A program made the position numbers and the translations under genes. The notes beneath the pieces were generated by a model. It did no database searches, had not been told where the DNA came from, and saw only the letters and a program-made list of their open reading frames with translations. This document shows positions 1-14,851 of a DNA stretch of 64,000 nt, piece after piece. Position 1 is the first letter of the stretch. The number at the start of each line of letters is the position of its first letter. The stretch is from Adineta vaga (Eukaryota; Animalia; Rotifera): contig CP075492.1 in assembly GCA_021613535.1 (NCBI GenBank), forward strand, positions 12,400,001-12,464,000. The letters run 5' to 3'.

Positions 1-2
1 AT

Positions 3-3000
3 GTGGTCAACGACGACGACGACGACGACGATGATGATGATGATGATATGGTACAACAGGAACAACAGGAGATTCATAAAGTAATATTATCGATAGACGA
101 TATCGATGATCATAAACGTCAATTGACATTCTGTAATGTTGATCTACAAGAAAATATGATTTTTCAAAAGATCTTATTAAATGAACAATTGCAATTATTT
201 CAAATAATCGAAAAGATCTATTCAACTTTAATTGAACTTGAAATGAATGGTCATCCAGAGTTTCAATTAAAAGACAATTGTTATGAAATTTATGATCCAT
301 ATGGTAAGATTTTTCATGTTAGTTTATGAACCAATGTGTATCTGTTTAGGTAAAGTGAAGCGAATCTTATTATGTGCAAAAAATCTTCGTATGAATAATC
401 GACAACAACAACAAGATTTTGAAACTTTGATTAAAGATCGAACACATGATTTCGAATTAATCTCTCGCGATTTAAATACTAAACATGAAATGTGGATAAA
501 AGATTTAGAAAGATATCGATATGAAAATCGATTATTGAAATTATTTTCTAATCGTCAAATCATGATTATGATTATTTTATTAACAACATCGACATTACAA
601 GATTCTATACAACGAAAGTTTCTTAACAAATTATTCTTATTTAAATCGAACACTATCGACGAAATTCAACGACAATCTAACGTAACTATTTGTTGTTTAA
701 TTCATTATTTACGATCGATTCGAATCAATGATTGTGATTTATCGATAGATAATATTACAATTTTATATCAAAAATATAAAATTGAACAAGGTACATCAGC
801 CGATGTAAGTCTTAAGCATTTATGTGGATTTTTAAAAGAATTATTTAATAATGGAAAAGAATTGTTAATAAAAAATACAATAAATAATGAAAATCAACAG
901 TTTTCAATCACGTTAAGTTCATCAGAATCAAGTTCGGATAAAAGAAAACTTGAAAATGATTTCAATATGGAAATCTATTGTATTCTTTTGGATATATTTA
1001 ATGATCGATTACCATCTGCCTATCAAATTCTTTGGTGTTCAATATCGACTGAAAATGATATTCGATTATTTTTTTCACGTATACGAACATTTCCTTCTCT
1101 TACATTCGCTATCATTGATATCGACAAAATGCATCATCGATTACGTGAATTATTATTAGATGAACAAAATTCTTTGACGAAAGAAACAAAATCTCATGGT
1201 TCTGTTTATTATTTCTCTAGAGAATTATTAACATCTAGAAAAGGTTTACAACCATTCATTATCCTACCGAAACACCGAAATTCAACGCATATGCATACAC
1301 AATTAATAACATCATTACGACGAAATAATATAGTATTACCACAAATTCAAATCATTGCTGGAGCAGCTGGAATTGGTAAGTTTTCTTTTTTGATAGGTGT
1401 GGGTTTGTCTTCATTACAGACCCACATCTTTCTTTCATTGTTCATATATTTCAGTTTCTCTATTTAGGAAAAACACATAAAATAAAAACGCAATACAAAA
1501 ATGAGAATATTCTATGTATTAGTATTAACGATAAAATCGATGTATCCTCTTTAATTCGATCATTGCTATTGTTTGAATCACAAACATCACATACTCAATT
1601 ATTCATCTATCTAAATATTTCGATTCATGCACCATTTGAACAATTGAATCGTATTCTTTTCTCTTTATTACTATGTAATTCATTACATGACGTTAGTACT
1701 GGTCTAACATTTTCTTTCTCAATGAATAAACAATGGAAATTTATTATTGAAGTACCATATACCGATAAATGCAATGTAAATATCAAAGAAAATTTTAATC
1801 ATATCCTTCCATTACTTTCAATTATCTCACCGAATACATTAGAAGAAATTACTAATCAAAATTATCATTTATATATTGGCGAAGAAGAAGAGTTTGTAGC
1901 AAGATTTCTTAAAGCTTATGAAAATCAAACTATTGATCAATTTTATCGAGAAACACGTTACGGTGATGGAGAACGGATAGAATTTGATCCCTTAACTGAT
2001 GATGAAGAATGTCGTTATAATATCTACAATTGTATCACGAAATATGCACCTGATTTGCTAAGAAATAAAATCAACGAATTATCTTTTACTAAATTTCTTT
2101 ATCGTCGTTTTCAATTTTTTACAAATGAATTTTATTGTTTGAATATGGCTTATGAACAGCTCGGTTCTATAGCAATGCAACAAATGATAAATGAAGCTCG
2201 ATCACTTACACAAATAGATTTTTCTTCCGATAAATATCCTCGAATTTATCTCGTTTATGATGGAGGTTTTTCCTTACAAGTATTACATAATGATTGGGAA
2301 CAAGTTCCAATACTTTTACAAAGTCTATTCGATTTTGTTGATCCATTAACACGATCATCTGATCATCGATATATCAAATGTCTATCATGGTTAATCAATA
2401 TACCATATGATACATTTGTTACTTTAATGAATGAGAAAAAGTTCATTTTAACAGAAAGTTTTACTTATAAACTTTTTCATATTCATGAAAGAAAACTAAC
2501 CAAATTAGCTTTGATTATTGAAGGTGAAACTGGTGTTGGAAAAACTTTTCTTCTACAATTCTATTCATCTTTACTCAATGCAAAAATTACTCATGGTAAA
2601 TTAAATGAGAATATATCTCCTTGTATTCTTGAACGAATAAGTCTATGGTTAGTCAAAGATATTATCGAGAATATTTTAGAAAAAAATCCAAATTTACTAA
2701 ATAAATCTCTTCGACAAATTACATTGAAATTACAGAATTCATCGAATGATGAAAATGATGATAATGATATATTTGGTTTGAATTCATTTCAATTTACAGA
2801 ACAGGATAATGCAGAAAGTGCAGTTCAATTACGAAATGAACCAATTGATCATGATCTTTTAGTAAATATCAAAACATCACTACAAACTTTTGATTTTGAT
2901 AAAGATAGGTTACGGAAAATCTGGAAAATAATTATAGCTATCACTGATGAACATTCAAGAGGTGTGACTAAAAAATTGATCTGTTCATTACATGATTTTG

Positions 3001-6000
3001 TTGTATTACAATTGGTTAATTCACCATTAATTATTCCAAGTTCTCGTTTATCAACTCTACTTGATACATCACAAATTCCGACAACGAAATTATCGATTGA
3101 GATTTTTGATGAATTCATATTATACAGTGAAATTAAGCCAGTATTCTATCGTTTACTTTTACATCCTGGTGTAACTGAAGAACAAATAGAAACATTTCTT
3201 TCACCCATTGCTGAATTAGCTCGACAAGTACCGAGTATTGAACTTGTTGTATTCTTTGATGAAGTCAATACATCATCATGTCTTGGTTTATTCAAAGAAA
3301 TGTTTATGGATGGAACACTACATGGAATTAGTTTACCGAAAAATATCTTCTTTACAGCAGCTATCAATCCATCTAGAACTTCGACGGATACTTCAGAAAA
3401 TCATCGTTTTGATGATATACAAGTTCATCGTCGAGATTATCTCGTTCATCAATTACCACAATCATTAGATTGTCTCAAAGTTTCTTATGGAATATTAAAT
3501 TCATCGACATTAACAGATTATGTCAAACAAAAGATAGCATTATTTACCGTAACTTCAACAAGAAATTCTAACAAACAAATGCCATTAGATCACTATGTAC
3601 AAGAAATGCTCTCGCAAGCAATATTAACAGCTCAAGAATTTTGTGAAAAAAATCTCGGTATGAAAAACTTTTCTAAACAGATCTAGAGGAGAGATTCGAT
3701 AATTCTATTTAGGACATAATTCGGTATCACAACGAGAAATTCAACGTTGTTTTAATCTGATTGATTTCTTTTGGAAAATGAAATATGACGATAGTGATGA
3801 TGAACCTGATTCGATACGATGTATTGTTTTATCATTAGCATTGATTTATTATTTTCGATTGCCAACAAAAGAAGATAATGCATTACGAAATGATCGAGAT
3901 ACACCATCACGAGAAGATCTTGGAGAAATTCTTTCTCAAAGTATTCCAGATTTTAGTCGAATTATTGACGATGAACTTGAAAGATTTGTTAATACAGAAA
4001 ATTTTGTTATTCCACATGGAGTTGCCGTCAATCAAGCTGTAAGAAAATATTCTATTTTTACATATCTTTTTTCAAAAGTCGGTATTTTAGATTCGTGAAC
4101 ATATTTTCTCAATTGTTGTTAGTATTATTACTCGTACACCATTGTGTATCATTGGTGCACCCGGTAAATCTTCGAACGAGTTCTTTTTTGCTTTTCAATG
4201 AAATATCTTTCATATTAGGTCAATCGAAAACTCTCTCATTTCAAATTGTTTTACAAAATCTTCAAGGTTCACAATTATCGATCAAACCATTTTGTAAACG
4301 TTTACCAGCAATCGATCCCTTCTTCTGTCTTGGTTCAAAGTATAGTCGATCCGATGATATTGCATATGTATTTGATCGTGCTATCAAACGTGAACAACAA
4401 TATCAACAGAATCGAATTGAAACACAATGTGTAAGTTCGTTTTTCGAGAAACGAATGCAAAGCATTTTTCTACAATATTGTTTCTAGGTTGTTTTTCTCG
4501 ATGAAGCATCATTACCTGATGAGAAGAAAATGGTTTTGAAAGTATTACATCCATATTTGGATGAATGTAAAGTAGCATTTGTTGCGGTAGCTAACAAATC
4601 TTTTGATGCTGCAAATGCAAATCGAATGATTTGTGTTTATCGATCATTACCATCTGAAGAGGATCAAAAAATATTGGCATATGGTTGTCTTGGTTTACAA
4701 ACGCATCTTCAACAATCGACGATCAAAAAGCCACTTGAAGATGTTATATATGGCCTTTGTCAAGGTTATCGTCGAATACTCAATAGTCCCAATATTCCGC
4801 ATATATTTCATGATCGTGATTTTATTTATATGTTAAGAGAATTACGTTTTGAATTATCAACAACTACTGATGAACAAGAAACAAATATTAGTTTAATTCA
4901 ACCCAAAAGTTTATTGCGTGCATTAGAAGATAATTTTAATGGAATTAATCGAAATGAATTTAGAGAACTAGTTCATATTTTTTGCAAAGCTATTCAGGAA
5001 AAATCGCCAAACTTTCGTTTACCATCAGAACGAAATCCACAGAAATTATATCGTGATATTCCAACTATTCTTCGTGAATCTATGAAACTTGATCCAAAAC
5101 GTCGACGTCTTTATGGTCGTTATAAGTTAATTATCGATGAATCTGAAGATGAAAGTGCAATAAATCTTCTTTATCAAACAGGTATTCTCGATCCTGATCG
5201 TAGTCGAACAACTGTTTTTCGTATGTCCGATTTTGTTGATGATATGAATAATGAATTACGAAATGTTGAAATCTTATCAACAATTAAATTATGTATGGAA
5301 ACAGGTAAAACGATTCTAATGGTGAATACAAGTCGAATACATGGTTCATTATATGATGTATTCAATCAGAATTTTTCAATTATGGCAACAGGTGATATGA
5401 GAAAAATCTTTTCTAAAGTTGCTATAGGTCCTAAAACAATTGATGTTGCTGTTCATGAAGATTTTCAATGTATTGTTCATATTAAACGAAATGAATTGAA
5501 AGATATACCACCACCTTTTCTCAGTCGATTTCAAAAATATTCATTAAGTATCAATGATTTCTATCGTATACGATTAGAAAAACTTCCACGTCAAGAACAA
5601 ACACTTTTGAAAACTATCGAAGAAAAAGTTCAATCATTTATTCAACATTTCGGTCGACAATATTTCTATGGAATCAATGATAGTACACTCTATTCATGTT
5701 TATTATCTCTTATTAAAATTAATGATGATGGTGATAATACATTATTAAATATTCATCAATATTATACACAAATGACATCTAAACTGAAATGTTTCATTGA
5801 ACAAAATCCTGCAGATGTTCAACAATGTTTTCTTCGATTGATACTTTCAAAATTGATTCAAATCGTTTCACCTGAGTCGATTATTTTGAAATTACCAACG
5901 TTCGAAGACAATGTACAAGAATGGTTATGCAATCTATACTTTCAACAACAAGAACATTTCAATATTGAAAATTTTATACAACAATTAACTTCAAATCCAT

Positions 6001-9000
6001 CGATAGATGTGAACACGAATATTTTATCATCAATAGAAAATGTTGAAGATCAAATTGTAGAGAATTCTGTTCATGTAACAACAAAAGTAATGATTTTTAC
6101 TCGTACATCTTCTTATGTTATTGGTCTTAATCAACAATCAAAAACTGAATTATTATTCAATAGTGATTTGAATAAAAATGATGATAATTTCAATAATCAA
6201 AGTGATCGAATTCAAGTACTCAATCTAGTAAATATACGCAATTGCTTATTTATTCAAGATACAATATATATACTTTGTTTAGAATACAATTGAAAATTCT
6301 CTTGAATTACAAGACAAATTCTTTACCTATCAAAATAATCGTTGTAAAAATTTATTAATGATTGTTATTGATGGTCGAATTGGACAACAACGTCTTCATA
6401 TTCCATATGTTCGACGATTGATTGATGAAACTGAACATTCTTGCAATAATCAAAATGTTTTCGAACGAAAATATTTTATTATCCTTGTTCATTCATCAAC
6501 ACAAGATCTCTATCATCAATCATGTTTTCCATCAATATTTCTACATAATTGGGAATTCTATTTCTTCGATACTTGTGCACCTGGTAGTGCTTTTCATCTT
6601 CGAAAAATGTTACGAATTATCTCATCACCTGATGCGCAATTATCCCAAGTTGATGATAATGTTTTATGTGATTTAAATATTCTTTTCGATGATTGTCTAT
6701 GGGATTTTTGTTCTCGATTGCATATCATTCTTCCTGATCTATCGTCCGATATATTTACTAACAAGTTTGCTTGTGAATTTTATCAACGACAAACAAAAAC
6801 AATACATCGTGTACGATGTTTCAAACAAATTCTTCAACAATCAATACATTTACAAAGACATATTGTCGATATTTATCATGAATATTTATCGAAAAAAAAG
6901 AATTCATCAAAAAACCTTTACAATTTAATTTATCAAATTTCGAAAGATATTCTATGTGGTAAACGTTTTACTGGTTTAATTGATTCAATTCAAATACAAA
7001 CGAGAAATTCCTTTACAAATTTTGTTTCAAACATATTGAAATTTATTATTAATGATTATGGTTTAGAAACATTAACGAAACTATCAACTGAATACAAACA
7101 GTATAGTCCATTATTGAATCTAATTGATTATCAATCATTTGCAGTTGATGATCAAAAAGATTTCTTTTCATCAACAACACAAGGAATCGTTCAACTTGTA
7201 ACTCATTATTCATGTATACCACAAACACCTTTGTATCATTTACTTCATCAACGTATTAAGACACTTGCTGATAATATTAAACTAAACATCATTCTAAAAC
7301 AAACAGAACGTCAAGGTTAGAATTTTCTTTACGATGACAAATCATCTCTTTCTTTCTTTCTTTAGAAAATGAAGAAGATTTACGTCGAGATTATTACGAA
7401 ATCCCATCAGTAACAACTGTCGGCAATAATTTCGCAAACGAGAATGAAATCATGGAAAATACATTTGAAAATTTTCGATATCGCTTAATGAATGCTTTTA
7501 TGAATGATAAAATATTAGCTGATATTATTGGTGAACGTATTCTTCATTCGTATTCCAATGATCTTGTTCGAACATATTGTACAATTGCTGAAAATAATTT
7601 TGATGATGATTATAATCAATGTCAACAAACTATTGAATTCATATCACAATGGTTATTACTTCTCGATGATAATGATCGACAATCATTGGAGAATTCTTCG
7701 AATAAAGATGTTTGGTTACTTGCACATGTTTATACAACGTATGAATATGAACAGAATGATTTAATTTCTATGTATTCAGCTTGTCGAATTCTCGATCGTC
7801 TTGATTCTACACGATCATTTTATCAAAATCTATCTATGGATGAAAATGCAACACGTTCCAATGTTCGTGAACAGTTTTTTCGCTTTATTTTTGATCATTT
7901 ATGGCAAAATCTTTGTCAATTATGTTCGAATAATGAAACTAATCAAGCATGGATATATGCTTATACATTAATATCTAAATATTATCCATCCGAGAAAGTT
8001 TTACAAAGTATACAATTAATTGATATTAAAAATCAAATTGAATTTATGCATTTAGCATATTTAGTATTTCTAAATAATAACATATCGGAATCACAAAAAT
8101 TGGTATCTATGTTACTGAATGGAACTGATTTTAAACAATCATCAATCTGTTTAAGATTATTACCGGATATATCTGATATTATTCAGCGATATTTACAAAA
8201 TAATAATATCGATAATTCAACTGTATTTATTGATCTTCAACAATGGATTCTTATGATTTTAAAATCAATTACACAACATTCGAAAGAAGATATTCATTTT
8301 CTTTTGAAATATTTAAATAATTCAACTGATCAAATATCTTTATCAACGAAACAATTTCTATTTAATGAATTAATTGATATAGCACTTAAAATACAATCAA
8401 AAACGAAAGAAAATTTCGATATTTGGGATCGATTAGATCTCATTCCATATCTGTTCGAATGTATTTCAAATATTGATTCGCTCGAAAATTATCAAATACC
8501 TTATCATCCATCTGTTCTAATCGATCCGAATGATTTACAATCTCGAGAAATCTTAATTGATCTGTATTTCTTTCATCTTCTTCGTCAAATGACAAACGAA
8601 ACAATCACATGTAATCTTATTAAAAAAGGAATGCTATCAAAAGTACCTAAAACTGATAATCGACGTCTTTTACCGATAATTGAACATGTTTTTAAACAAC
8701 TGAAAGATTATTTTCGAGTAAAAATGGTCGCTCTATTATTATGTGAAATAAATAAGAATGAAAATGAACTTACGGAAGTGAATCGTATTCTTTCAACAAT
8801 AATATCTGACTTGTTAATGATTGATCAACAAACAAAAGAACTTACTCGTTCTCTTCAATTATTTCTTTCGACGATTATTTCGAAACAATCATGGAATTTT
8901 CTTTTAAATCTATTGAAATCTGAATCCATTCAACGTATAAATAATCAATGGGCAACGATTCTCTATTCAATACTTGAATTGAAACAAAAACAATCTTTAC

Positions 9001-12000
9001 AATTATGTCATCAAATACAATTTGCATCTTCTCTAAACACGAATTTATCTATATTTCCTAGACTACATCAACTATATCAAGAATTACGAGATATTATTGA
9101 TATATGTATCCAAAGTAATACCTGGAAAACTCTATTAGATTGGATGACACGAAAATTAACGGCAGATACAAATAGATTGAAATCGAATGAAATCATCGCA
9201 AGCTTATTGTTAAATATTTATTATGATTATTATTGTACTAATCAATTAGATTCGATCTTATCATTATTAGACATCATACAAAGTACTCTACAATTATCGA
9301 CAGAAGAATTTCAAATTTTTCAAGCTTTTATACAACCCAAACAATATATGAGTGGTTACTTTCCGAAATCAGAAAATTTTCTTAATCATATATTTCAACT
9401 TGATACGAAAGATGAATTTGATTTAACCATACGACATTTACTTGTCAATCTTCTTGCAATGATTTTATTAGGTGGAAAACAATCATTTCTATGGACTTTC
9501 GTCTTTCAACCATCGGCATTACAGCATACATTCGGTAAGACGAATTACTTTACTTTTATTTGTAAGAGAAAACGAACTGTTTGTTACACATAGGATTTGG
9601 ATCAACTTCACAAAGTCCAATTCAATCAAGTGGTGTTCATTATGATTGTGGCTGTATACTATCAGAAAATGGTGATCTAGTACGTTTTACAAATACCGGT
9701 CATATCAGTACGCTCAAGGATCCTGCTATTTACGTTGCCTATTTTTCGACTTTCGGTGCCTTAGTAAGTTATATTGTAGTATTCATTGATATGATGTTTT
9801 GTATTTGAAATTAATTAGGCATGGCATTTATTATTAAATCAAGGAGCTATTGAGCATTTGCATGGTCCAATTCTATCACCTTCAGCAATTAATGATACTC
9901 GAACTGTTCATCAACTTGTTGGTGATGATATTCGAGCAAAAGTTTGTCATTTTGTTTGTACACGAATTTTATCATCCTTTCATTTTCTATCAAATCTAAC
10001 AAATCAAACTGATTGTTGTCTTCTTCTAAATCGTTGTTTCGAACAAATGGCTTACTTAACACAGGAACAAAATGGATGGATTAAAACGAATTATAAAGCA
10101 TTAAGTGATCAACATCGAGCTGAACAAGAATATCAAAATCAAGTATTCTATTTCATTCATGGAAAACTCATGGAATATAAGACTTGTATCAATGAATTAA
10201 ATTTAAAATCAGACATACAAAGAAATCTTCAAAATTTTGTTGATCAAACACCAATTATCGTTCAATTCACACACTTTAAAACAGCATTACATCATCCAAT
10301 GTACTCTCAAACATCTTTGAAGATCTTATGTCATATTTTAAATTCATTTGATTTCCTAAAAATCACGAACTTGATCTATCATCTCAGTCAATTTTACCTT
10401 CTTCTACATCAAACATACACACAATTAATTGAACGTACAGAATTTGTTACGATAACACTGAGAGAATTGTATAATCGAGGTCAAAAGTATTATCAACAAC
10501 AACAATATCAAAATGAAGAAAGAGCTCATCTATCAATTATTAATAATGGTATCGAAGCTGTCAATATGTATCATCGATTTGCAAATGGTCTTATTCAACC
10601 AGGTGCTTGTGACGAAACTCAACGTTTTATAGAGATCACACACGATACACCAGTTAACTATCTTGTCACTACTGAAAATCATGATGAAGGAGATATTATT
10701 ATGCGTATACTCAAGTAAGTTTCGTATCAAATCATAACCAAATTAGATTTATATTTGTTCTATTTTAGTGTTCTGGTCGATTATCATAACAGTTTATTAG
10801 AATTGATTGAGAAAGAATTCAATAATGATGAAAATACGAATCTTGATGTTTTAAAGAATTTAGTAAATAACTTAACATCACGTAATGTATCGATTTTAAA
10901 AGTAGCACGCGATAATACAGGTGCAATTGCATTGAATAAACAAGATTGTATATGGATCGAACAATTATGTCAAGCTAGTCTTATCAATACTGATGAATCC
11001 TATTTCTTAACAAATAATTCGACATTCATATTTGATTTCACTTATGTTCAATCACAAATTCTTCGAACATATTTTCTTCTCTGTCGTATTAATCATCGTC
11101 ATATTCATCAAAAATATCAGTGTCATACAAAACGAATAGAAACAAGATTAACAACTGAAATGGATAATTTTGAATTGAATAAAGAATATCTAATATCACT
11201 TTCAAATGAACAACGTGAAAATAAATGGAATCATTTGAAAGATATTTCATTTGATAAACTTTCTCATACATTTAATTTTCTTCGACAAATCGCATTAACA
11301 TTACAAAACTTGGAAGGAGATAAATCATCGTTATATCTATTTCAATTTATCAAAGAAATCGATCATCAGAATGAATTCGATCATCGATTAGAACAATGTG
11401 AAATTCAAAATTTTCAATTATGTTATATGCATGATATATTAAAACTGTATGCAGATTCATTGAATGAATGTCCACATTCATCTACAGATGTACCACCTTT
11501 ACTTCGAGTTCCAATTCATATTCAATTAAACAATGAATTTAATGTCAATTTAGATAAAAATATTCTTCATTTTGATTATAAGAATGATATTGCTAAAATT
11601 CATACAATGATTCAATATATTACCGAATTTCTTAATGAATTGAAATCAATCGAAGATACTTTACTTCAACAATGTTCACAATCATTAGTACAAATATGTC
11701 AACATTTAAGAATTGATAATGTTCTTATTTCGTGGATACCGGAAGGTATTCGATGTGAAAATTATCTTGCTGTTAGTATCTATTTGATTCGTGTACGATC
11801 AATTCTACAGGAACGAAAATTAAATATGGAAGAAAAACAAATGAAAATATGGAATGAAAATGTTTCTTCGAATGAACAAAATGATAAACATGAAAATCGT
11901 TATTATCAATATTTACAAACAGAAGATGAGGAATCAAATATTGAAGAATCGCATTCTTGGATACTTCCTTCAATTGAATTGTCAGTATCAGATCATGAAA

Positions 12001-14126
12001 ATCTAACTCAATATGAAGAACCAAAACAATCCATTAATCATTCGATCGAATATAAATCGTTGATGGAATTAGAGATGAAATTAATTCCATTGATGTCATC
12101 ACGATTGATTCAACAAGTTCATCAATATCGAACGGAATTCATGATCGAACAGTTAACTATCAGTGGTGCCCAAAAATTTGTGATTAGACATCGTGATAAC
12201 AATCTCACTTCATTTCAATGTAAAAGTGAAAAATTCTATGAAAAATTGAAAAAATTCTTTGTGGACAAGAAATATGACTCAGCGCAATTTGTTTTTATCG
12301 ATAAAGCAGATCTAGCTATTGATTTAACAAAGAATGATAATAATATATTATATAAAACATTTCTAGAGTGTCATGTAGTTGAAAAACAAACATTAGTTGC
12401 CGTTAGATTTCATTTTCGTAATTCAGAATATGAATATTTAACTAGTAGTTCCAATAATATTTCAACTATTATTCATCGATTTATTGCTGATAATCAATTG
12501 AACTCATTATCATTAGATATTTCTCTATGTTTTTCGAATGAATATGGAATGTGTATCGATGATGAACGTGTGAGCGATCTTGGTGCAATAAACAGCAAAA
12601 TTGTTGATATTACGGTAACGGAAGAGACATCCGATACGAGCAATCTGTGTGAATTAAATCTACGATATAAAAAAGGTATGAAGATAGAAGAAAGCTTAAT
12701 ATTATCATCAATATTTATTTTTCTAGATCAAAATAAAACAAATCTATTTCATTCAACATCTACATGGGGACAAATCAATATGTGGTTAAACACTCTATCC
12801 GAAACAGATAATTCAACCGTTACGAATTATGCATTTTCATTAAAAGAACCGAAAACTGTTCTCTACTCAGATCAAATTATTTCAACAACGATTAATGATT
12901 CTCAATCGGTTACTGTTGATATTATTAATCAAAATTCTCTTGTTGAAGTAGTTTTCTCCACTCAAGTAAATACATATTCAGCCTATGCATTAAAATCGAT
13001 GAAAATCTCACTGATGTTACAAGATCAGGAACTTTTAAAGCAATTAAATCTTACTGAAATTTCTTCAAATGATTTACTTCTTATATTGGAAGAAAAACCA
13101 AATCAACAAATTTTGACACAAAATGATTTTGAACGTCCTCTCAGTGATTATTGTACTACTGAAATGCAATCAATTCATTTTCGTATAGCAACGTTGATAT
13201 TAGTAACAAAATATGATGACAATGAACAGATTCGAATTTCTTTACCAAATGGAAATGTAACCGTTGAACAATTATTAAAATTAACTGGAACATCATTTGA
13301 GATTTATAAATTTTTAGCACCCATTGATACAAAGAGAATTGTTGAATATAATCAAACATTGTCAACGATGGATAGCAATCAATTTATTCTTTGTAAAGAG
13401 AACGAAACATGTCGTGTACAAATTATAAAAGCAGAAGATTCGGATGCAATAGTCGATGCATATCAACGCTATATTCTTTCTGCTACTATAGCTGATATTT
13501 ACAAGGAAAATCAACTTGATAATTTACGAAAATATCTTCTTTATGAGAATGAATACGTACCTTCAATTGAAACTCAATTGGCATGTTTTCGACTAGAATT
13601 ACCTATTCGATTCACCGTAATCAACGATAATCTACCAATCAGTGTTCTCGTCACAAATAATGGAACAGAACAAAATGTCAAACTTCACTGTTTTCCTTCG
13701 ATGACAGCGAAACGTCTATGTACTATTTCTTGTCAGTTATTTGGTTTGAATGCGGAACACTGTGAGCTAATGACCCAAGATGATCAGACACAAATTGATG
13801 ACGATATCACGTTAGAAGATATCAGTGAGACTGAATCTGAAATTAAATTTCGACTAATTTCTGCACTGTTGATGTCTTGTTCAGTCACATATTCTGAAAA
13901 GACAATCACAATGTTCTATCAGCAAACGACTTTAGCAGCAACTATTGTTACAGACACATTGGAAAAACTTCATATTTTATACGATGATATTAACGAATAC
14001 GTATTGATTGCGATGACTGATGATTCAGTAGATATTGATTTAGATTTATCAATTGAGGATATTCGTGAATTATTTCCTCCTACATCCAATACGATGGCAT
14101 TTAAATTGATGAAGAACAATGAATAG
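3..14126 (+). CDS. RNF213: RNF213/mysterin-like giant multi-AAA+ ATPase, 5'-partial. Exons <3-303, 350-1375, 1468-3657, 3713-4038, 4091-4163, 4219-4430, 4488-6227, 6283-7315, 7366-9534, 9594-9763, 9819-10714, 10769-12675, 12727-14126 (about 4480 aa in window)
   Basis: All ORF pieces join in frame through 12 GT-AG introns (46-92 nt). Walker A motifs GAAGIGKT (spliced), GETGVGKT (2523-2546) and IIGAPGQSKT (spliced). Walker B motifs VVFFDEVN (3246) and VVFLDEASLPDEKKMVLKVLHPYLDE. VSQREIQRC and IREHIFSIVVSIITRTPLCIIGAPG match the RNF213 core order and motifs as recalled (VSLRDVERC; ENVFMMVVCIELKIPLFLVGKPGSSKS; VVLDEVGLAE..PLKTLHPLLE). The symbol denotes family membership, not proven orthology. 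Confidence 0.9.
12..47 (+). repeat. (GAC)6(GAT)6 coding microsatellite (poly-Asp)
   Basis: Directly visible; encodes 12 Asp in the first visible RNF213-like exon. Confidence 0.9.
1395..1429 (+). other. 14-bp RNA stem-loop inside RNF213-like intron 2
   Basis: aggtgtgggtttgt-cttcatt-acagacccacatct pairs fully with two G-U wobbles. It lies in the 92-nt intron 1376-1467, the longest intron of the gene. Confidence 0.6.
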
Positions 14127-14454
14127 AAATGATTAGTTTCTGATAATGATCGGACATTGCTTTGAATCTATTTCTTATTTGTTAAAATTAATAAAGAGAA
14201 TTTATTTTTCTTGCTATTTTATATTGTTCGTAAATTGAGAGTTTTCTCTATTTTCAAACAATTAACTAACGCGATTGATTAATAATAACTGGATCATATA
14301 TCTCGAAGACGGTTTTCATGTGTGATATATAGACATCTTCTTCCTATTAATATCGAATTAAAGAAATATACTTTGTTTTCTTCAATTTATTTATATTTCA
14401 TTGCATCACATATACAAAAACAGTTTACAAATATAAACACAAATAAGTCAGTAT

Positions 14455-14685
14455 CTAGTTGATATAATGTTGATGTATAGCAGCAGGAATGCCAGTATAT
14501 GGTTGAAAATATCTGTGTCCTAATGGAACGAAATCAACTTCTCGTTCTACGTTAACACGTCCTGTGAATGGATTACGATAAACTTCAACATCTTGTGTAT
14601 ATATGCCATAACCGTAATTTCCATAACCAATAGTTTGGTAATCTTGATTCCAGCTATTAATAGGAACAATTGGTGCACCGATCAT
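14455..14685 (-). CDS. Small Tyr/Gly-rich orphan protein (76 aa)
   Basis: Single-exon ATG-TAG ORF with coding-like composition (GYGNYGYGIY; VEVYRNPFTGRVNVEREVDFVP). TATAAA on the minus strand at about 14772-14777. No family recognised. Confidence 0.7.
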   Translation of the reverse strand: MIGAPIVPINSWNQDYQTIGYGNYGYGIYTQDVEVYRNPFTGRVNVEREVDFVPLGHRYFQPYTGIPAAIHQHYIN

Positions 14686-14851
14686 TTTGTTTGATTTGTA
14701 GTAGAATGTAGTAGAATAATAAAATGCTTTATTGTATGAATGTATAAAAATATGAGAAAAACTTGTCGATATTTATACTATAACGATACGTCGGTAAATA
14801 TTACTGCTTACCTTCTATCGATACTACAAAACAAAAATACATAAATATTAC

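What the first reader, a model, noticed from the sequence alone, without database searches (positions are those of the whole stretch)
12160..14126. RNF213-like AAA+ giant ends in about eight tandem, diverged ubiquitin-like domains
Seen: the last ~640 aa divide into eight consecutive 70-88 aa units. Each has a beta-beta-helix-beta-beta hydrophobic pattern and a pre-helix S/T motif like ubiquitin's TIENVK (NNISTII, STWGQI, SMKISLML, VTVEQLL, ATIADIY, MTAKRLC, TLAATIV). Unit 7 is ISVLVTNNGTEQNVKLHCFPSMTAKRLCTISCQLFGLNAEHCELMTQDDQTQIDDDITLEDISETESEIKFRLI. No di-Gly separates or ends the units, so it is not a cleavable polyubiquitin precursor. Known: vertebrate RNF213 coats intracellular pathogens with ubiquitin, binds the di-Ubl ISG15, and to my knowledge has no such tail. 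Inference: a cell-autonomous immune ATPase carrying a genetically encoded poly-Ubl chain (built-in ubiquitin/ISG15 mimic, adaptor array or decoy). This is the best candidate for an undescribed system here.
Basis: partly seen in the sequence, partly recalled or inferred. Interest (0 to 1): 0.85.

Follow-up and report, generated by a model that had tools for sequence, protein, structure and literature searches.

The report
Eight ubiquitin-fold domains ending RNF213-like giant
A giant rotifer relative of the human immune ubiquitin ligase RNF213 ends in a fixed, uncleavable row of eight very diverged ubiquitin-shaped domains and shows no zinc-finger active site, a domain combination I found described in no paper.

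Summary

Correction: RNA contigs show a 51-nt in-frame intron (12676-12726) inside unit 3, so the mature tail is 638 aa. The same contigs join the tail to the upstream exons, so it is one gene.

The genome is Adineta vaga. The AAA core matches RNF213 (E 6e-16). No RING or RZ finger was found, although two other A. vaga RNF213 genes carry an RZ finger.

The tail profile hits only bdelloid proteins, always at the extreme C-terminus and mostly over the whole profile. It is the fastest-evolving part of the protein (28-41% identity between paralogues, against 63-69% in the AAA exon).

The ubiquitin/ISG15-mimic reading is weak: unit 7 does not conserve the Ile44 patch. A semi-rigid interaction arm of the USP7 type fits better.

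The scan noted the same architecture on a paralogue (s1-494326, s1-489660). New variant of known kinds.

The parts
1..12158 (+). Upstream exons of the same giant gene, which starts left of the window (at least about 4 kb further, in L009). They include the Walker-A exon 1563-3686 and the AAA exon 4530-6293.
   Evidence: AAA exon 4530-6293 matches human RNF213 residues 2917-3259 at E 6e-16. Exon 1563-3686 gives weak AAA Pfam hits and RNF213 at E 1.5e-3. No RING or RZ pattern was found. The two A. vaga paralogues are collinear over all exons.
9535..9593 (+). Intron, 59 nt, GT..AG.
   Evidence: Spliced out in RNA contigs of three runs.
10715..10768 (+). Intron, 54 nt, GT..AG. The last coding block starts at 10769.
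   Evidence: Spliced out in RNA contigs of two runs.
10769..12158 (+). Pre-tail part of the last coding block, about 463 aa, of unknown fold.
   Evidence: No Pfam or PDB sequence match, even with a 16-sequence profile. About 40% identical to the paralogues.
12159..12386 (+). Ubl unit 1 (tail aa 1-76).
   Evidence: The AF2 model has beta-beta-helix-beta-beta-beta order, pLDDT about 88. The ESM Atlas USP7-type model aligns to tail 1-490.
12387..12635 (+). Ubl unit 2 (aa 77-159).
Evidence: AF2 model. Profile match to unit 4 at 69%.
12636..12932 (+). Ubl unit 3 (aa 160-258), interrupted by the intron after its first strand.
   Evidence: AF2 model. Motif STWGQI caps helix 1.
12676..12726 (+). In-frame 51-nt intron inside unit 3 (phase 1, GT..AG). 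It removes tail aa 173-189.
   Evidence: Spliced out in contigs of all four RNA runs. Splice sites were read in the sequence. It coincides with the only stretch of pLDDT below 50, residues 174-190. Many homologues break at about 174 and 195.
12933..13169 (+). Ubl unit 4 (aa 259-337).
   Evidence: AF2 model. Motif SMKISLML caps helix 1.
13170..13397 (+). Ubl unit 5 (aa 338-413).
   Evidence: AF2 model. Tetra-ubiquitin aligns to tail 345-655 over 276 residues.
13398..13628 (+). Ubl unit 6 (aa 414-490).
   Evidence: AF2 model. Motif ATIADIY caps helix 1.
13629..13865 (+). Ubl unit 7 (aa 491-569), the most ubiquitin-like unit.
13866..14126 (+). Ubl unit 8 (aa 570-655) and the stop codon.

Best explanation
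Shown: window 12159-14123 encodes the C-terminal arm of one expressed giant gene of the bdelloid rotifer Adineta vaga. The gene's AAA+ core is homologous to RNF213, and no RING or RZ finger was found in it. The arm is a fixed row of eight diverged ubiquitin-fold (beta-grasp) domains, 638 aa after removal of a 51-nt in-frame intron. It has no Gly-Gly, so it cannot be cut into free modifiers.

Inferred: the array works as a semi-rigid protein-interaction or regulatory arm, as the five tandem Ubl domains at the C-terminus of the deubiquitinase USP7 do. Each position would have its own identity and a fast-changing surface. The arm would bind partners or targets, or fold back on the AAA/scaffold part to control it. 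It would not act as a mimic of a ubiquitin chain.
For: Fold:
- AF2 pLDDT 91, pTM 0.77, eight beta-grasp units.
- Foldseek: tetra-ubiquitin E 4.5e-15, USP7 HUBL E 6e-12 over about 530-620 alignment columns.
- Polyubiquitin and USP7-type models in the ESM Atlas.
- Pfam TUG-UBL1, RA, FERM-F1 or ubiquitin hits in 11+4+2+1 of 68 relatives.

One gene, expressed: spliced RNA contigs bridge 12159 and run to 14092.

RNF213 relation: AAA exon at E 6e-16.

Fixed array:
- The tail profile hits 27 bdelloid proteins of the set, always ending at the extreme C-terminus. 23 match over profile 1-630, and the four partial hits include proteins named as partial.
- Units resemble their positional counterparts in other proteins far more than each other.

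Scaffold rather than mimic:
- Linkers between units are 1-5 residues without Gly, and pTM is high for 655 aa.
- In U7 the equivalents of ubiquitin core residues L43, L56 and L69 are 93-95% conserved. L8 is Glu in 24 of 42 sequences and I44 is variable.

Fast evolution: paralogue identity is 63-69% in the AAA exon but 28-41% in the tail. A crude pN/pS of about 0.55 comes from 40 RNA-versus-genome differences.
Against: - No binding partner, structure or phenotype is known, so the mechanism is by analogy only.
- pTM is an indirect sign of rigidity, and I had no access to PAE or coordinates.
- Units 1-6 have almost no sequence-level Ubl signal and were not searched singly by structure.
- The ubiquitin alignment used for the patch analysis has low HHalign probability (4%), so single positions could be off register.
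- The model includes the 17 intron-encoded residues. The spliced form was not folded.
- Beta-grasp is a superfold, so RA/RBD-like or FERM-F1-like functions fit the same model.
Confidence: 0.55

Rival explanations
1. Built-in polyubiquitin/ISG15 mimic. The octa-Ubl tail is read by ubiquitin-binding adaptors such as autophagy receptors or the proteasome. An RNF213 relative without a ligase active site could then 'coat' whatever it binds without any ubiquitylation, or act as a decoy.
For: - The best structural match is linear tetra-ubiquitin, and U7 fits ubiquitin at 1.4 A.
- No RING or RZ finger was found in the gene, whereas two other A. vaga RNF213 genes have an RZ finger. A hard-wired Ubl chain in place of catalysis is therefore conceivable.
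Against: - The Ile44-patch equivalents are not conserved in the most ubiquitin-like unit.
- No unit is recognisable as ubiquitin by sequence in the window protein.
- Linkers are short and Gly-free, and the predicted array is compact.
- The surfaces diverge fast between paralogues, which is unexpected if conserved ubiquitin receptors must read them.
Confidence: 0.12
2. Variable recognition module. The tail is the target-sensing part of a conflict-driven machine, and its surfaces diversify under selection, like SPRY in TRIM5 or the LRR of NLRs.
For: - The tail is the fastest-evolving part of the protein, and pN/pS is about 0.55.
- Only core residues are nearly invariant.
- A. vaga has at least three full paralogues plus fragments.
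- The same array sits next to an NHL-repeat exon at another locus.
Against: - pN/pS is below 1 and comes from a partial list of low-depth contig differences, so relaxed constraint explains it equally well.
- Unit number is fixed, and all units evolve at a similar rate.
- No infection data were examined.
Confidence: 0.18
3. Array of RA/RBD- or FERM-F1-like beta-grasp domains that bind small GTPases or lipids, rather than ubiquitin-system partners.
For: - 4 of 68 relatives hit Pfam RA and 2 hit a FERM F1 family.
Against: - TUG-UBL1 hits are more frequent and stronger.
- U7 is closest to ubiquitin itself.
- Fold alone cannot decide.
Confidence: 0.08
4. Artefact: the region is a separate gene, a pseudogene, or an over-confident model of non-repetitive sequence.
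For: - The single-sequence AF2 model was poor, pLDDT 34.
- Pairwise internal repeat scores are at chance level.
Against: - RNA contigs bridge the boundary and splice correctly.
- There are 144 homologous clusters.
- pLDDT is 91 with an alignment.
- Independent Pfam Ubl hits occur in relatives.
Confidence: 0.02

Closest known systems
USP7/HAUSP C-terminal HUBL (five tandem Ubl domains; PDB 2YLM, 4WPH, 5C56)
   Same: Both are non-cleavable rows of diverged Ubl domains at the extreme C-terminus of a large ubiquitin-system-related enzyme. Each position is distinct and there is no Gly-Gly. It is the best multi-domain structural match after polyubiquitin (E 6e-12, about 530-620 columns; Atlas row 10).
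   Different: The rotifer tail has eight units, not five. It is attached to an AAA+ giant, not a USP protease. No sequence similarity was detected. No activating C-terminal peptide or known partners.
Vertebrate RNF213 (mysterin)
   Same: Homologous dynein-like AAA core (E 6e-16). Giant size: the A. vaga paralogues are 5221 and 5692 aa.
   Different: RNF213 has a RING, an RZ finger with the catalytic Cys, and ends in a bilobal alpha-helical CTD that docks the E2 (PMC7311170, PMC12075652). Here no RING or RZ finger was found, the post-AAA part has no detectable similarity, and the end is eight Ubl domains.
Polyubiquitin (UBB/UBC) and linear ubiquitin chains
   Same: Head-to-tail beta-grasp repeats. 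Top Foldseek hit. A. vaga has ordinary polyubiquitin genes.
   Different: Polyubiquitin units are nearly identical, end in Gly-Gly and are cleaved. Here units are about 15-20% identical to ubiquitin, differ from one another, have no Gly-Gly, and do not conserve the Ile44 patch.
Di-Ubl proteins ISG15, FAT10 and the OASL C-terminus
   Same: Tandem Ubl folds linked to immunity. All are among the structural matches.
   Different: They have two units, not eight. ISG15 and FAT10 are conjugatable modifiers with a C-terminal Gly-Gly, which this tail lacks.
RZ-less RNF213-related branch in sponges and protists (for example Oscarella lobularis P0211)
   Same: Closest non-rotifer relatives of the AAA region (E 1e-129 to 1e-60). 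The Oscarella group's C-terminus gives a 51% profile match to U7-U8 and ubiquitin-family feature neighbours.
   Different: The tail profile does not hit them, and only one of ten C-termini gives a Ubl-type Pfam hit, RA at E 0.001. Whether they carry the same array is open.

Membership tests
Ubiquitin-like (beta-grasp) superfold | beta-beta-alpha-beta-beta-(3-10)-beta topology in a domain of about 75 aa. | tested here: met
Ubiquitin-like (beta-grasp) superfold | Sequence-profile match to a family of the ubiquitin clan. | tested here: inconclusive
   The window's own tail hits no Pfam family and nothing significant in PDB profile searches. 11 of 68 relatives hit TUG-UBL1 (best E 4.5e-9) and a few hit RA, FERM F1 or ubiquitin, mostly in U7-U8.
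Conjugatable ubiquitin-type modifier / polyubiquitin precursor | C-terminal Gly-Gly at the end of each unit or of the protein, for cleavage and conjugation. | tested here: not met
   No GG occurs anywhere in the 655 residues. The protein ends ...KLMKNNE.
Conjugatable ubiquitin-type modifier / polyubiquitin precursor | Conserved Leu8-Ile44-Val70 hydrophobic patch. | tested here: not met
   In U7 the L8 equivalent is Glu in 24 of 42 sequences and I44 is variable (M/T/K/I). Core L43, L56 and L69 equivalents are 93-95% conserved. The alignment register has low HHalign confidence.
RNF213 E3 ligase family | Dynein-like AAA core homologous to RNF213. | tested here: met
   Exon 4530-6293 against human RNF213 residues 2917-3259, E 6e-16. 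The full-length relative P0166 reaches named rnf213-like and RZ-bearing proteins at E 1e-31 to 1e-35.
RNF213 E3 ligase family | RZ-type zinc finger carrying the catalytic cysteine. | tested here: not met
   No PF20173 hit on any exon at E up to 1, and no RZ-like pattern. The same test finds the RZ finger (E 6e-6, 26 bits, just under the 27-bit cut-off) in two other A. vaga RNF213 genes.
RNF213 E3 ligase family | C4HC3 RING in the E3 module. | tested here: not met
   No RING-type pattern and almost no CxxC in any + frame from 8 kb upstream of the window to 14126. No RING Pfam hit in the full-length relative P0166.
RNF213 E3 ligase family | Alpha-helical E3 scaffold and an E2-docking CTD at the C-terminus. 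| tested here: inconclusive
   The post-AAA exons and a 16-sequence profile of the pre-tail part find no RNF213 chain by sequence. The actual C-terminus is the Ubl array, not a helical CTD.
USP7-type HUBL tail | C-terminal tandem Ubl domains, each position distinct, attached to a USP catalytic domain. | tested here: not met
   The arrangement of tandem distinct Ubls is shared, but there is no USP domain and no sequence homology. It is an analogue, not a member.

The most novel reading that the evidence does not exclude
An ancient RNF213-related branch (bdelloids, perhaps also sponges) has lost the RING and RZ ligase centres and instead carries a hard-wired octa-Ubl 'chain'. The ATP-driven machine would then mark or bridge whatever it binds to ubiquitin-fold readers (proteasome, p97-type or autophagy adaptors) without any E1-E2-E3 chemistry. 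That would be ubiquitin-like tagging by recruitment rather than by conjugation.
Probability: 0.1. Interest if true: 0.85.

Novelty: new variant of a known kind. Interest (0 to 1): 0.55.

Why it matters
RNF213 is a leading example of cell-autonomous immunity by unconventional ubiquitylation. This finding shows a sister architecture that keeps the ATP motor and has no detectable zinc-finger catalytic centre. It ends in the longest fixed tandem Ubl array I know of on an enzyme-like protein: eight units, against five in USP7.

It offers a natural test of what the RNF213 chassis does without ligase chemistry, and of what long non-cleavable Ubl arrays are for. It also assigns a fold to a 640-aa region that public records leave as 'unnamed protein product' in dozens of bdelloid proteins.

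It corrects any gene model that reads through the in-frame intron at 12676-12726. The practical impact is modest until a partner or phenotype is known.

Tried and rejected
- Single-sequence AlphaFold2 of the tail: unusable, pLDDT 34.
- Pairwise self-alignment of 80-aa windows: best score 50, against 52 for the 99.9th percentile of shuffles, so no sequence repeat at this level.
- Pfam on the window's tail and on all other exons: nothing over threshold.
- phmmer and profile searches of the tail (three sub-profiles) and of the pre-tail against PDB sequences: nothing significant. Only sub-threshold PCGF1, NP95 and ISG15 rows at E 0.4-1.6.
- phmmer of post-AAA exons against the PDB: no RNF213 match.
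- RING, RZ and CxxC pattern scans: none.
- The small exon with 'HYDCGC' (about 9594-9763) was considered as a degenerate RZ finger. It has no Pfam hit and no resemblance to the RZ sequence of the A. vaga canonical paralogues, so it was rejected.
- The search for homologous proteins on the tail: only 4 hits, because of the word and length filter.
- 'Separate gene' and 'pseudogene': rejected by spliced RNA contigs.
- Literature searches (RNF213 with rotifer, invertebrate or ubiquitin-like; bdelloid with ubiquitin-like) found no description of this tail. The bdelloid fungal-infection paper does not mention ubiquitin, AAA or RNF213.
- Pfam on the C-termini of ten non-rotifer relatives: one weak RA hit only.

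Full report
**Where and what.** The window is G000:C3:12400001-12464000 of a 100.8-Mb, six-contig, 30% G+C genome. A paralogous protein found later is GenBank UJR19001.1 of Adineta vaga, on a contig of exactly the length of G000:C5. The organism is therefore the bdelloid rotifer A. vaga.

The + strand from before base 1 to 14126 is one multi-exon gene. Its last open frame runs 10755-14126. The tail in frame is 12159-14123, 655 codons.

**Is the tail part of that gene, and is it expressed?** Four runs of one 2024 study are labelled only as probable RNA, but their contigs carry canonical GT..AG splices. The introns they show are 9535-9593, 10715-10768 and, unexpectedly, 12676-12726 inside the tail.

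- Contigs 11821-12484 and 11814-12228 bridge the start of the tail.
- Others run on to 14092.
- Depth falls to zero after 14186.

So the 'separate gene' refutation does not apply.

The 51-nt intron is in frame, has no stop, and is phase 1. It removes tail residues 173-189, so the mature tail has 638 aa. Many homologues break at about residue 174 and resume at about 195, so the intron position appears to be shared by many relatives.

All searches used the unspliced reference, and the joined step is left out.

**Fold.** Without an alignment AlphaFold2 failed (pLDDT 34). An exhaustive HMMER search gave 144 clusters of relatives. A 68-row alignment (A1) then gave pLDDT 91 and pTM 0.77.

The only low-confidence stretch is 174-190, which is the intron-encoded residues. 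This agrees with the RNA result and was obtained independently of it.

DSSP shows eight units of beta-beta-helix-beta-beta-(3-10)-beta. They are joined by linkers of 1-5 residues. One long strand even runs across the U4/U5 border.

With the intron removed, strand 163-168 becomes the first strand of unit 3.

**Structure searches.**

- Foldseek against the PDB: linear tetra-ubiquitin (E 4.5e-15), the USP7 five-Ubl HUBL tail (E 6e-12, about 530-620 columns), di-ubiquitin, ISG15 and OASL.
- VIA-align: tetra-ubiquitin on tail 345-655.
- ESM Atlas: polyubiquitin models and a USP7-type hydrolase, the latter aligned to tail 1-490.
- Language-model neighbours are ubiquitin-clan clusters, at lead-only scores of about 0.8.

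**Sequence-level evidence.** This is weaker.

- The window protein hits no Pfam family.
- Profiles of U1-2, U3-6 and U7-8 find nothing significant among PDB sequences.
- Across the 68 relatives, 11 hit TUG-UBL1 (best E 4.5e-9), 4 hit RA, 2 hit a FERM F1 family and 1 hits ubiquitin. These hits are concentrated in U7-U8.
- Internal repeat similarity is marginal: only U7~U8 (87%) and U2~U4 (69%) by HHalign.

The units are therefore old and individually distinct. Units 1-6 rest on the model.

**The rest of the protein.**

- Exon 4530-6293 matches the RNF213 AAA core (E 6e-16).
- Nothing after the AAA core matches RNF213 by sequence.
- No RING or RZ finger was found by Pfam or by pattern.
- The same Pfam test finds an RZ finger (E 6e-6, 26 bits against a 27-bit cut-off) in two other A. 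vaga genes, on C1 and C6. These are 50% identical to each other and have no tail similarity.

With the 4911-aa Didymodactylos relative as query, the window's branch contains bdelloids first. Sponges (Oscarella, Sycon, Amphimedon) and protists come next. RZ-bearing RNF213 proteins appear only after that.

Vertebrate RNF213 ends in a bilobal alpha-helical CTD that docks the E2 (PMC7311170, PMC12075652). The Ubl tail is thus not a feature of canonical RNF213.

**Distribution and evolution.** A. vaga has three full paralogues with AAA core plus tail: this one, C2:15.32 Mb and C1:11.24 Mb. It also has a broken fragment at C3:3.69 Mb, a small fragment on C2, and an array at C5:0.817 Mb.

Identity between paralogues falls along the protein:

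| Region | Identity between paralogues |
|---|---|
| AAA exon 4530-6293 | 63-69% |
| Pre-tail (10770-12158) | about 40% |
| Tail (12159-14123) | 28-41% |

All eight units diverge at similar rates. A crude pN/pS from 40 RNA-versus-genome differences is about 0.55.

A tail HMM hits 27 bdelloid proteins of the set (Adineta, Rotaria, Didymodactylos), always ending at the extreme C-terminus. Of these, 23 match over profile 1-630; the four partial hits include proteins named as partial. It hits none of the non-rotifer relatives. Unit number is therefore fixed.

One lead suggests the tail is older than bdelloids. The C-termini of the Oscarella group give a 51% HHalign match to U7-U8 (E 1.5e-4). Their feature neighbours are ubiquitin-family clusters at 0.85-0.88. 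Pfam gives only one weak RA hit among them.

**Mechanism.** The structure is shown; the function is inferred.

Against a ubiquitin-chain mimic: in U7, aligned to A. vaga's own ubiquitin, the buried L43, L56 and L69 equivalents are 93-95% conserved. The L8 equivalent is mostly Glu, and I44 is variable. Linkers are short and Gly-free, and pTM is high.

The best-fitting analogue is USP7's HUBL, a C-terminal row of distinct Ubl domains that binds partners and regulates the enzyme. Fast surface divergence also allows a target-recognition role.

**Earlier notes of this scan.** Notes s1-494326 and s1-489660 describe the same architecture on a paralogue. My results agree on four points:

- No RZ finger.
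- Eight Ubl units.
- A weak GOLD hit upstream.
- A branch that extends beyond rotifers.

I could not confirm that the ligase scaffold is retained.

**Verdict.** This is a new variant of known kinds, with function open.

Noticed in passing
window 12676-12726: A 51-nt intron that is in frame and free of stops, so the ORF reads straight through it. A gene model built from ORFs alone would add 17 false residues inside Ubl unit 3.
   Followed up: yes
window 14368-14700 (small ORF 14455..14685, - strand): RNA contig word depth here is 700-3200, against 2-15 over the giant gene. The stretch overlaps a 76-aa Gly/Tyr-rich ORF on the minus strand just downstream of the giant gene's stop.
   Followed up: no
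L003:593-3447 (G000:C5:816305-819159): An NHL-repeat exon (Pfam NHL, E 8.8e-26) is followed, after a 77-nt GT..AG gap that keeps the reading frame, by an eight-unit Ubl array 30% identical to the window's tail. GenBank annotates the array alone as a 682-aa protein (UJR19001.1). A possible NHL-plus-poly-Ubl fusion would mean the array is a movable module. No RNA evidence was examined.
   Followed up: partly
L018/L019 (G000:C1:11161400-11169628, -) and L020/L021 (G000:C6:6301134-6307343, -): Two RNF213-type genes with single exons of 2743 and 2070 aa. Both carry an RZ-type zinc finger (PF20173, E 6e-6) and are 50% identical to each other. They have no Ubl tail similarity.
   Followed up: partly
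L005/L006 (G000:C3:3688934-3690226, -): A truncated copy with the pre-tail and tail only. It has in-frame stops and no AAA exons within 20 kb upstream, so it is probably a pseudogene fragment.
   Followed up: partly
L009:5988-7085 (about 1-2 kb left of the window): Weak GOLD-domain hit (PF25099 GOLD_PATL1_C, E 0.0038) in an N-terminal exon of the same gene. This matches the GOLD-like arm noted by an earlier agent on a paralogue.
   Followed up: no
P0211:4900-5586 (Oscarella lobularis) and P0212, P0217, P0225: The C-termini of the closest non-rotifer relatives give a 51% profile match to units 7-8 and ubiquitin-family feature neighbours. The Ubl tail may therefore predate bdelloids.
   Followed up: partly
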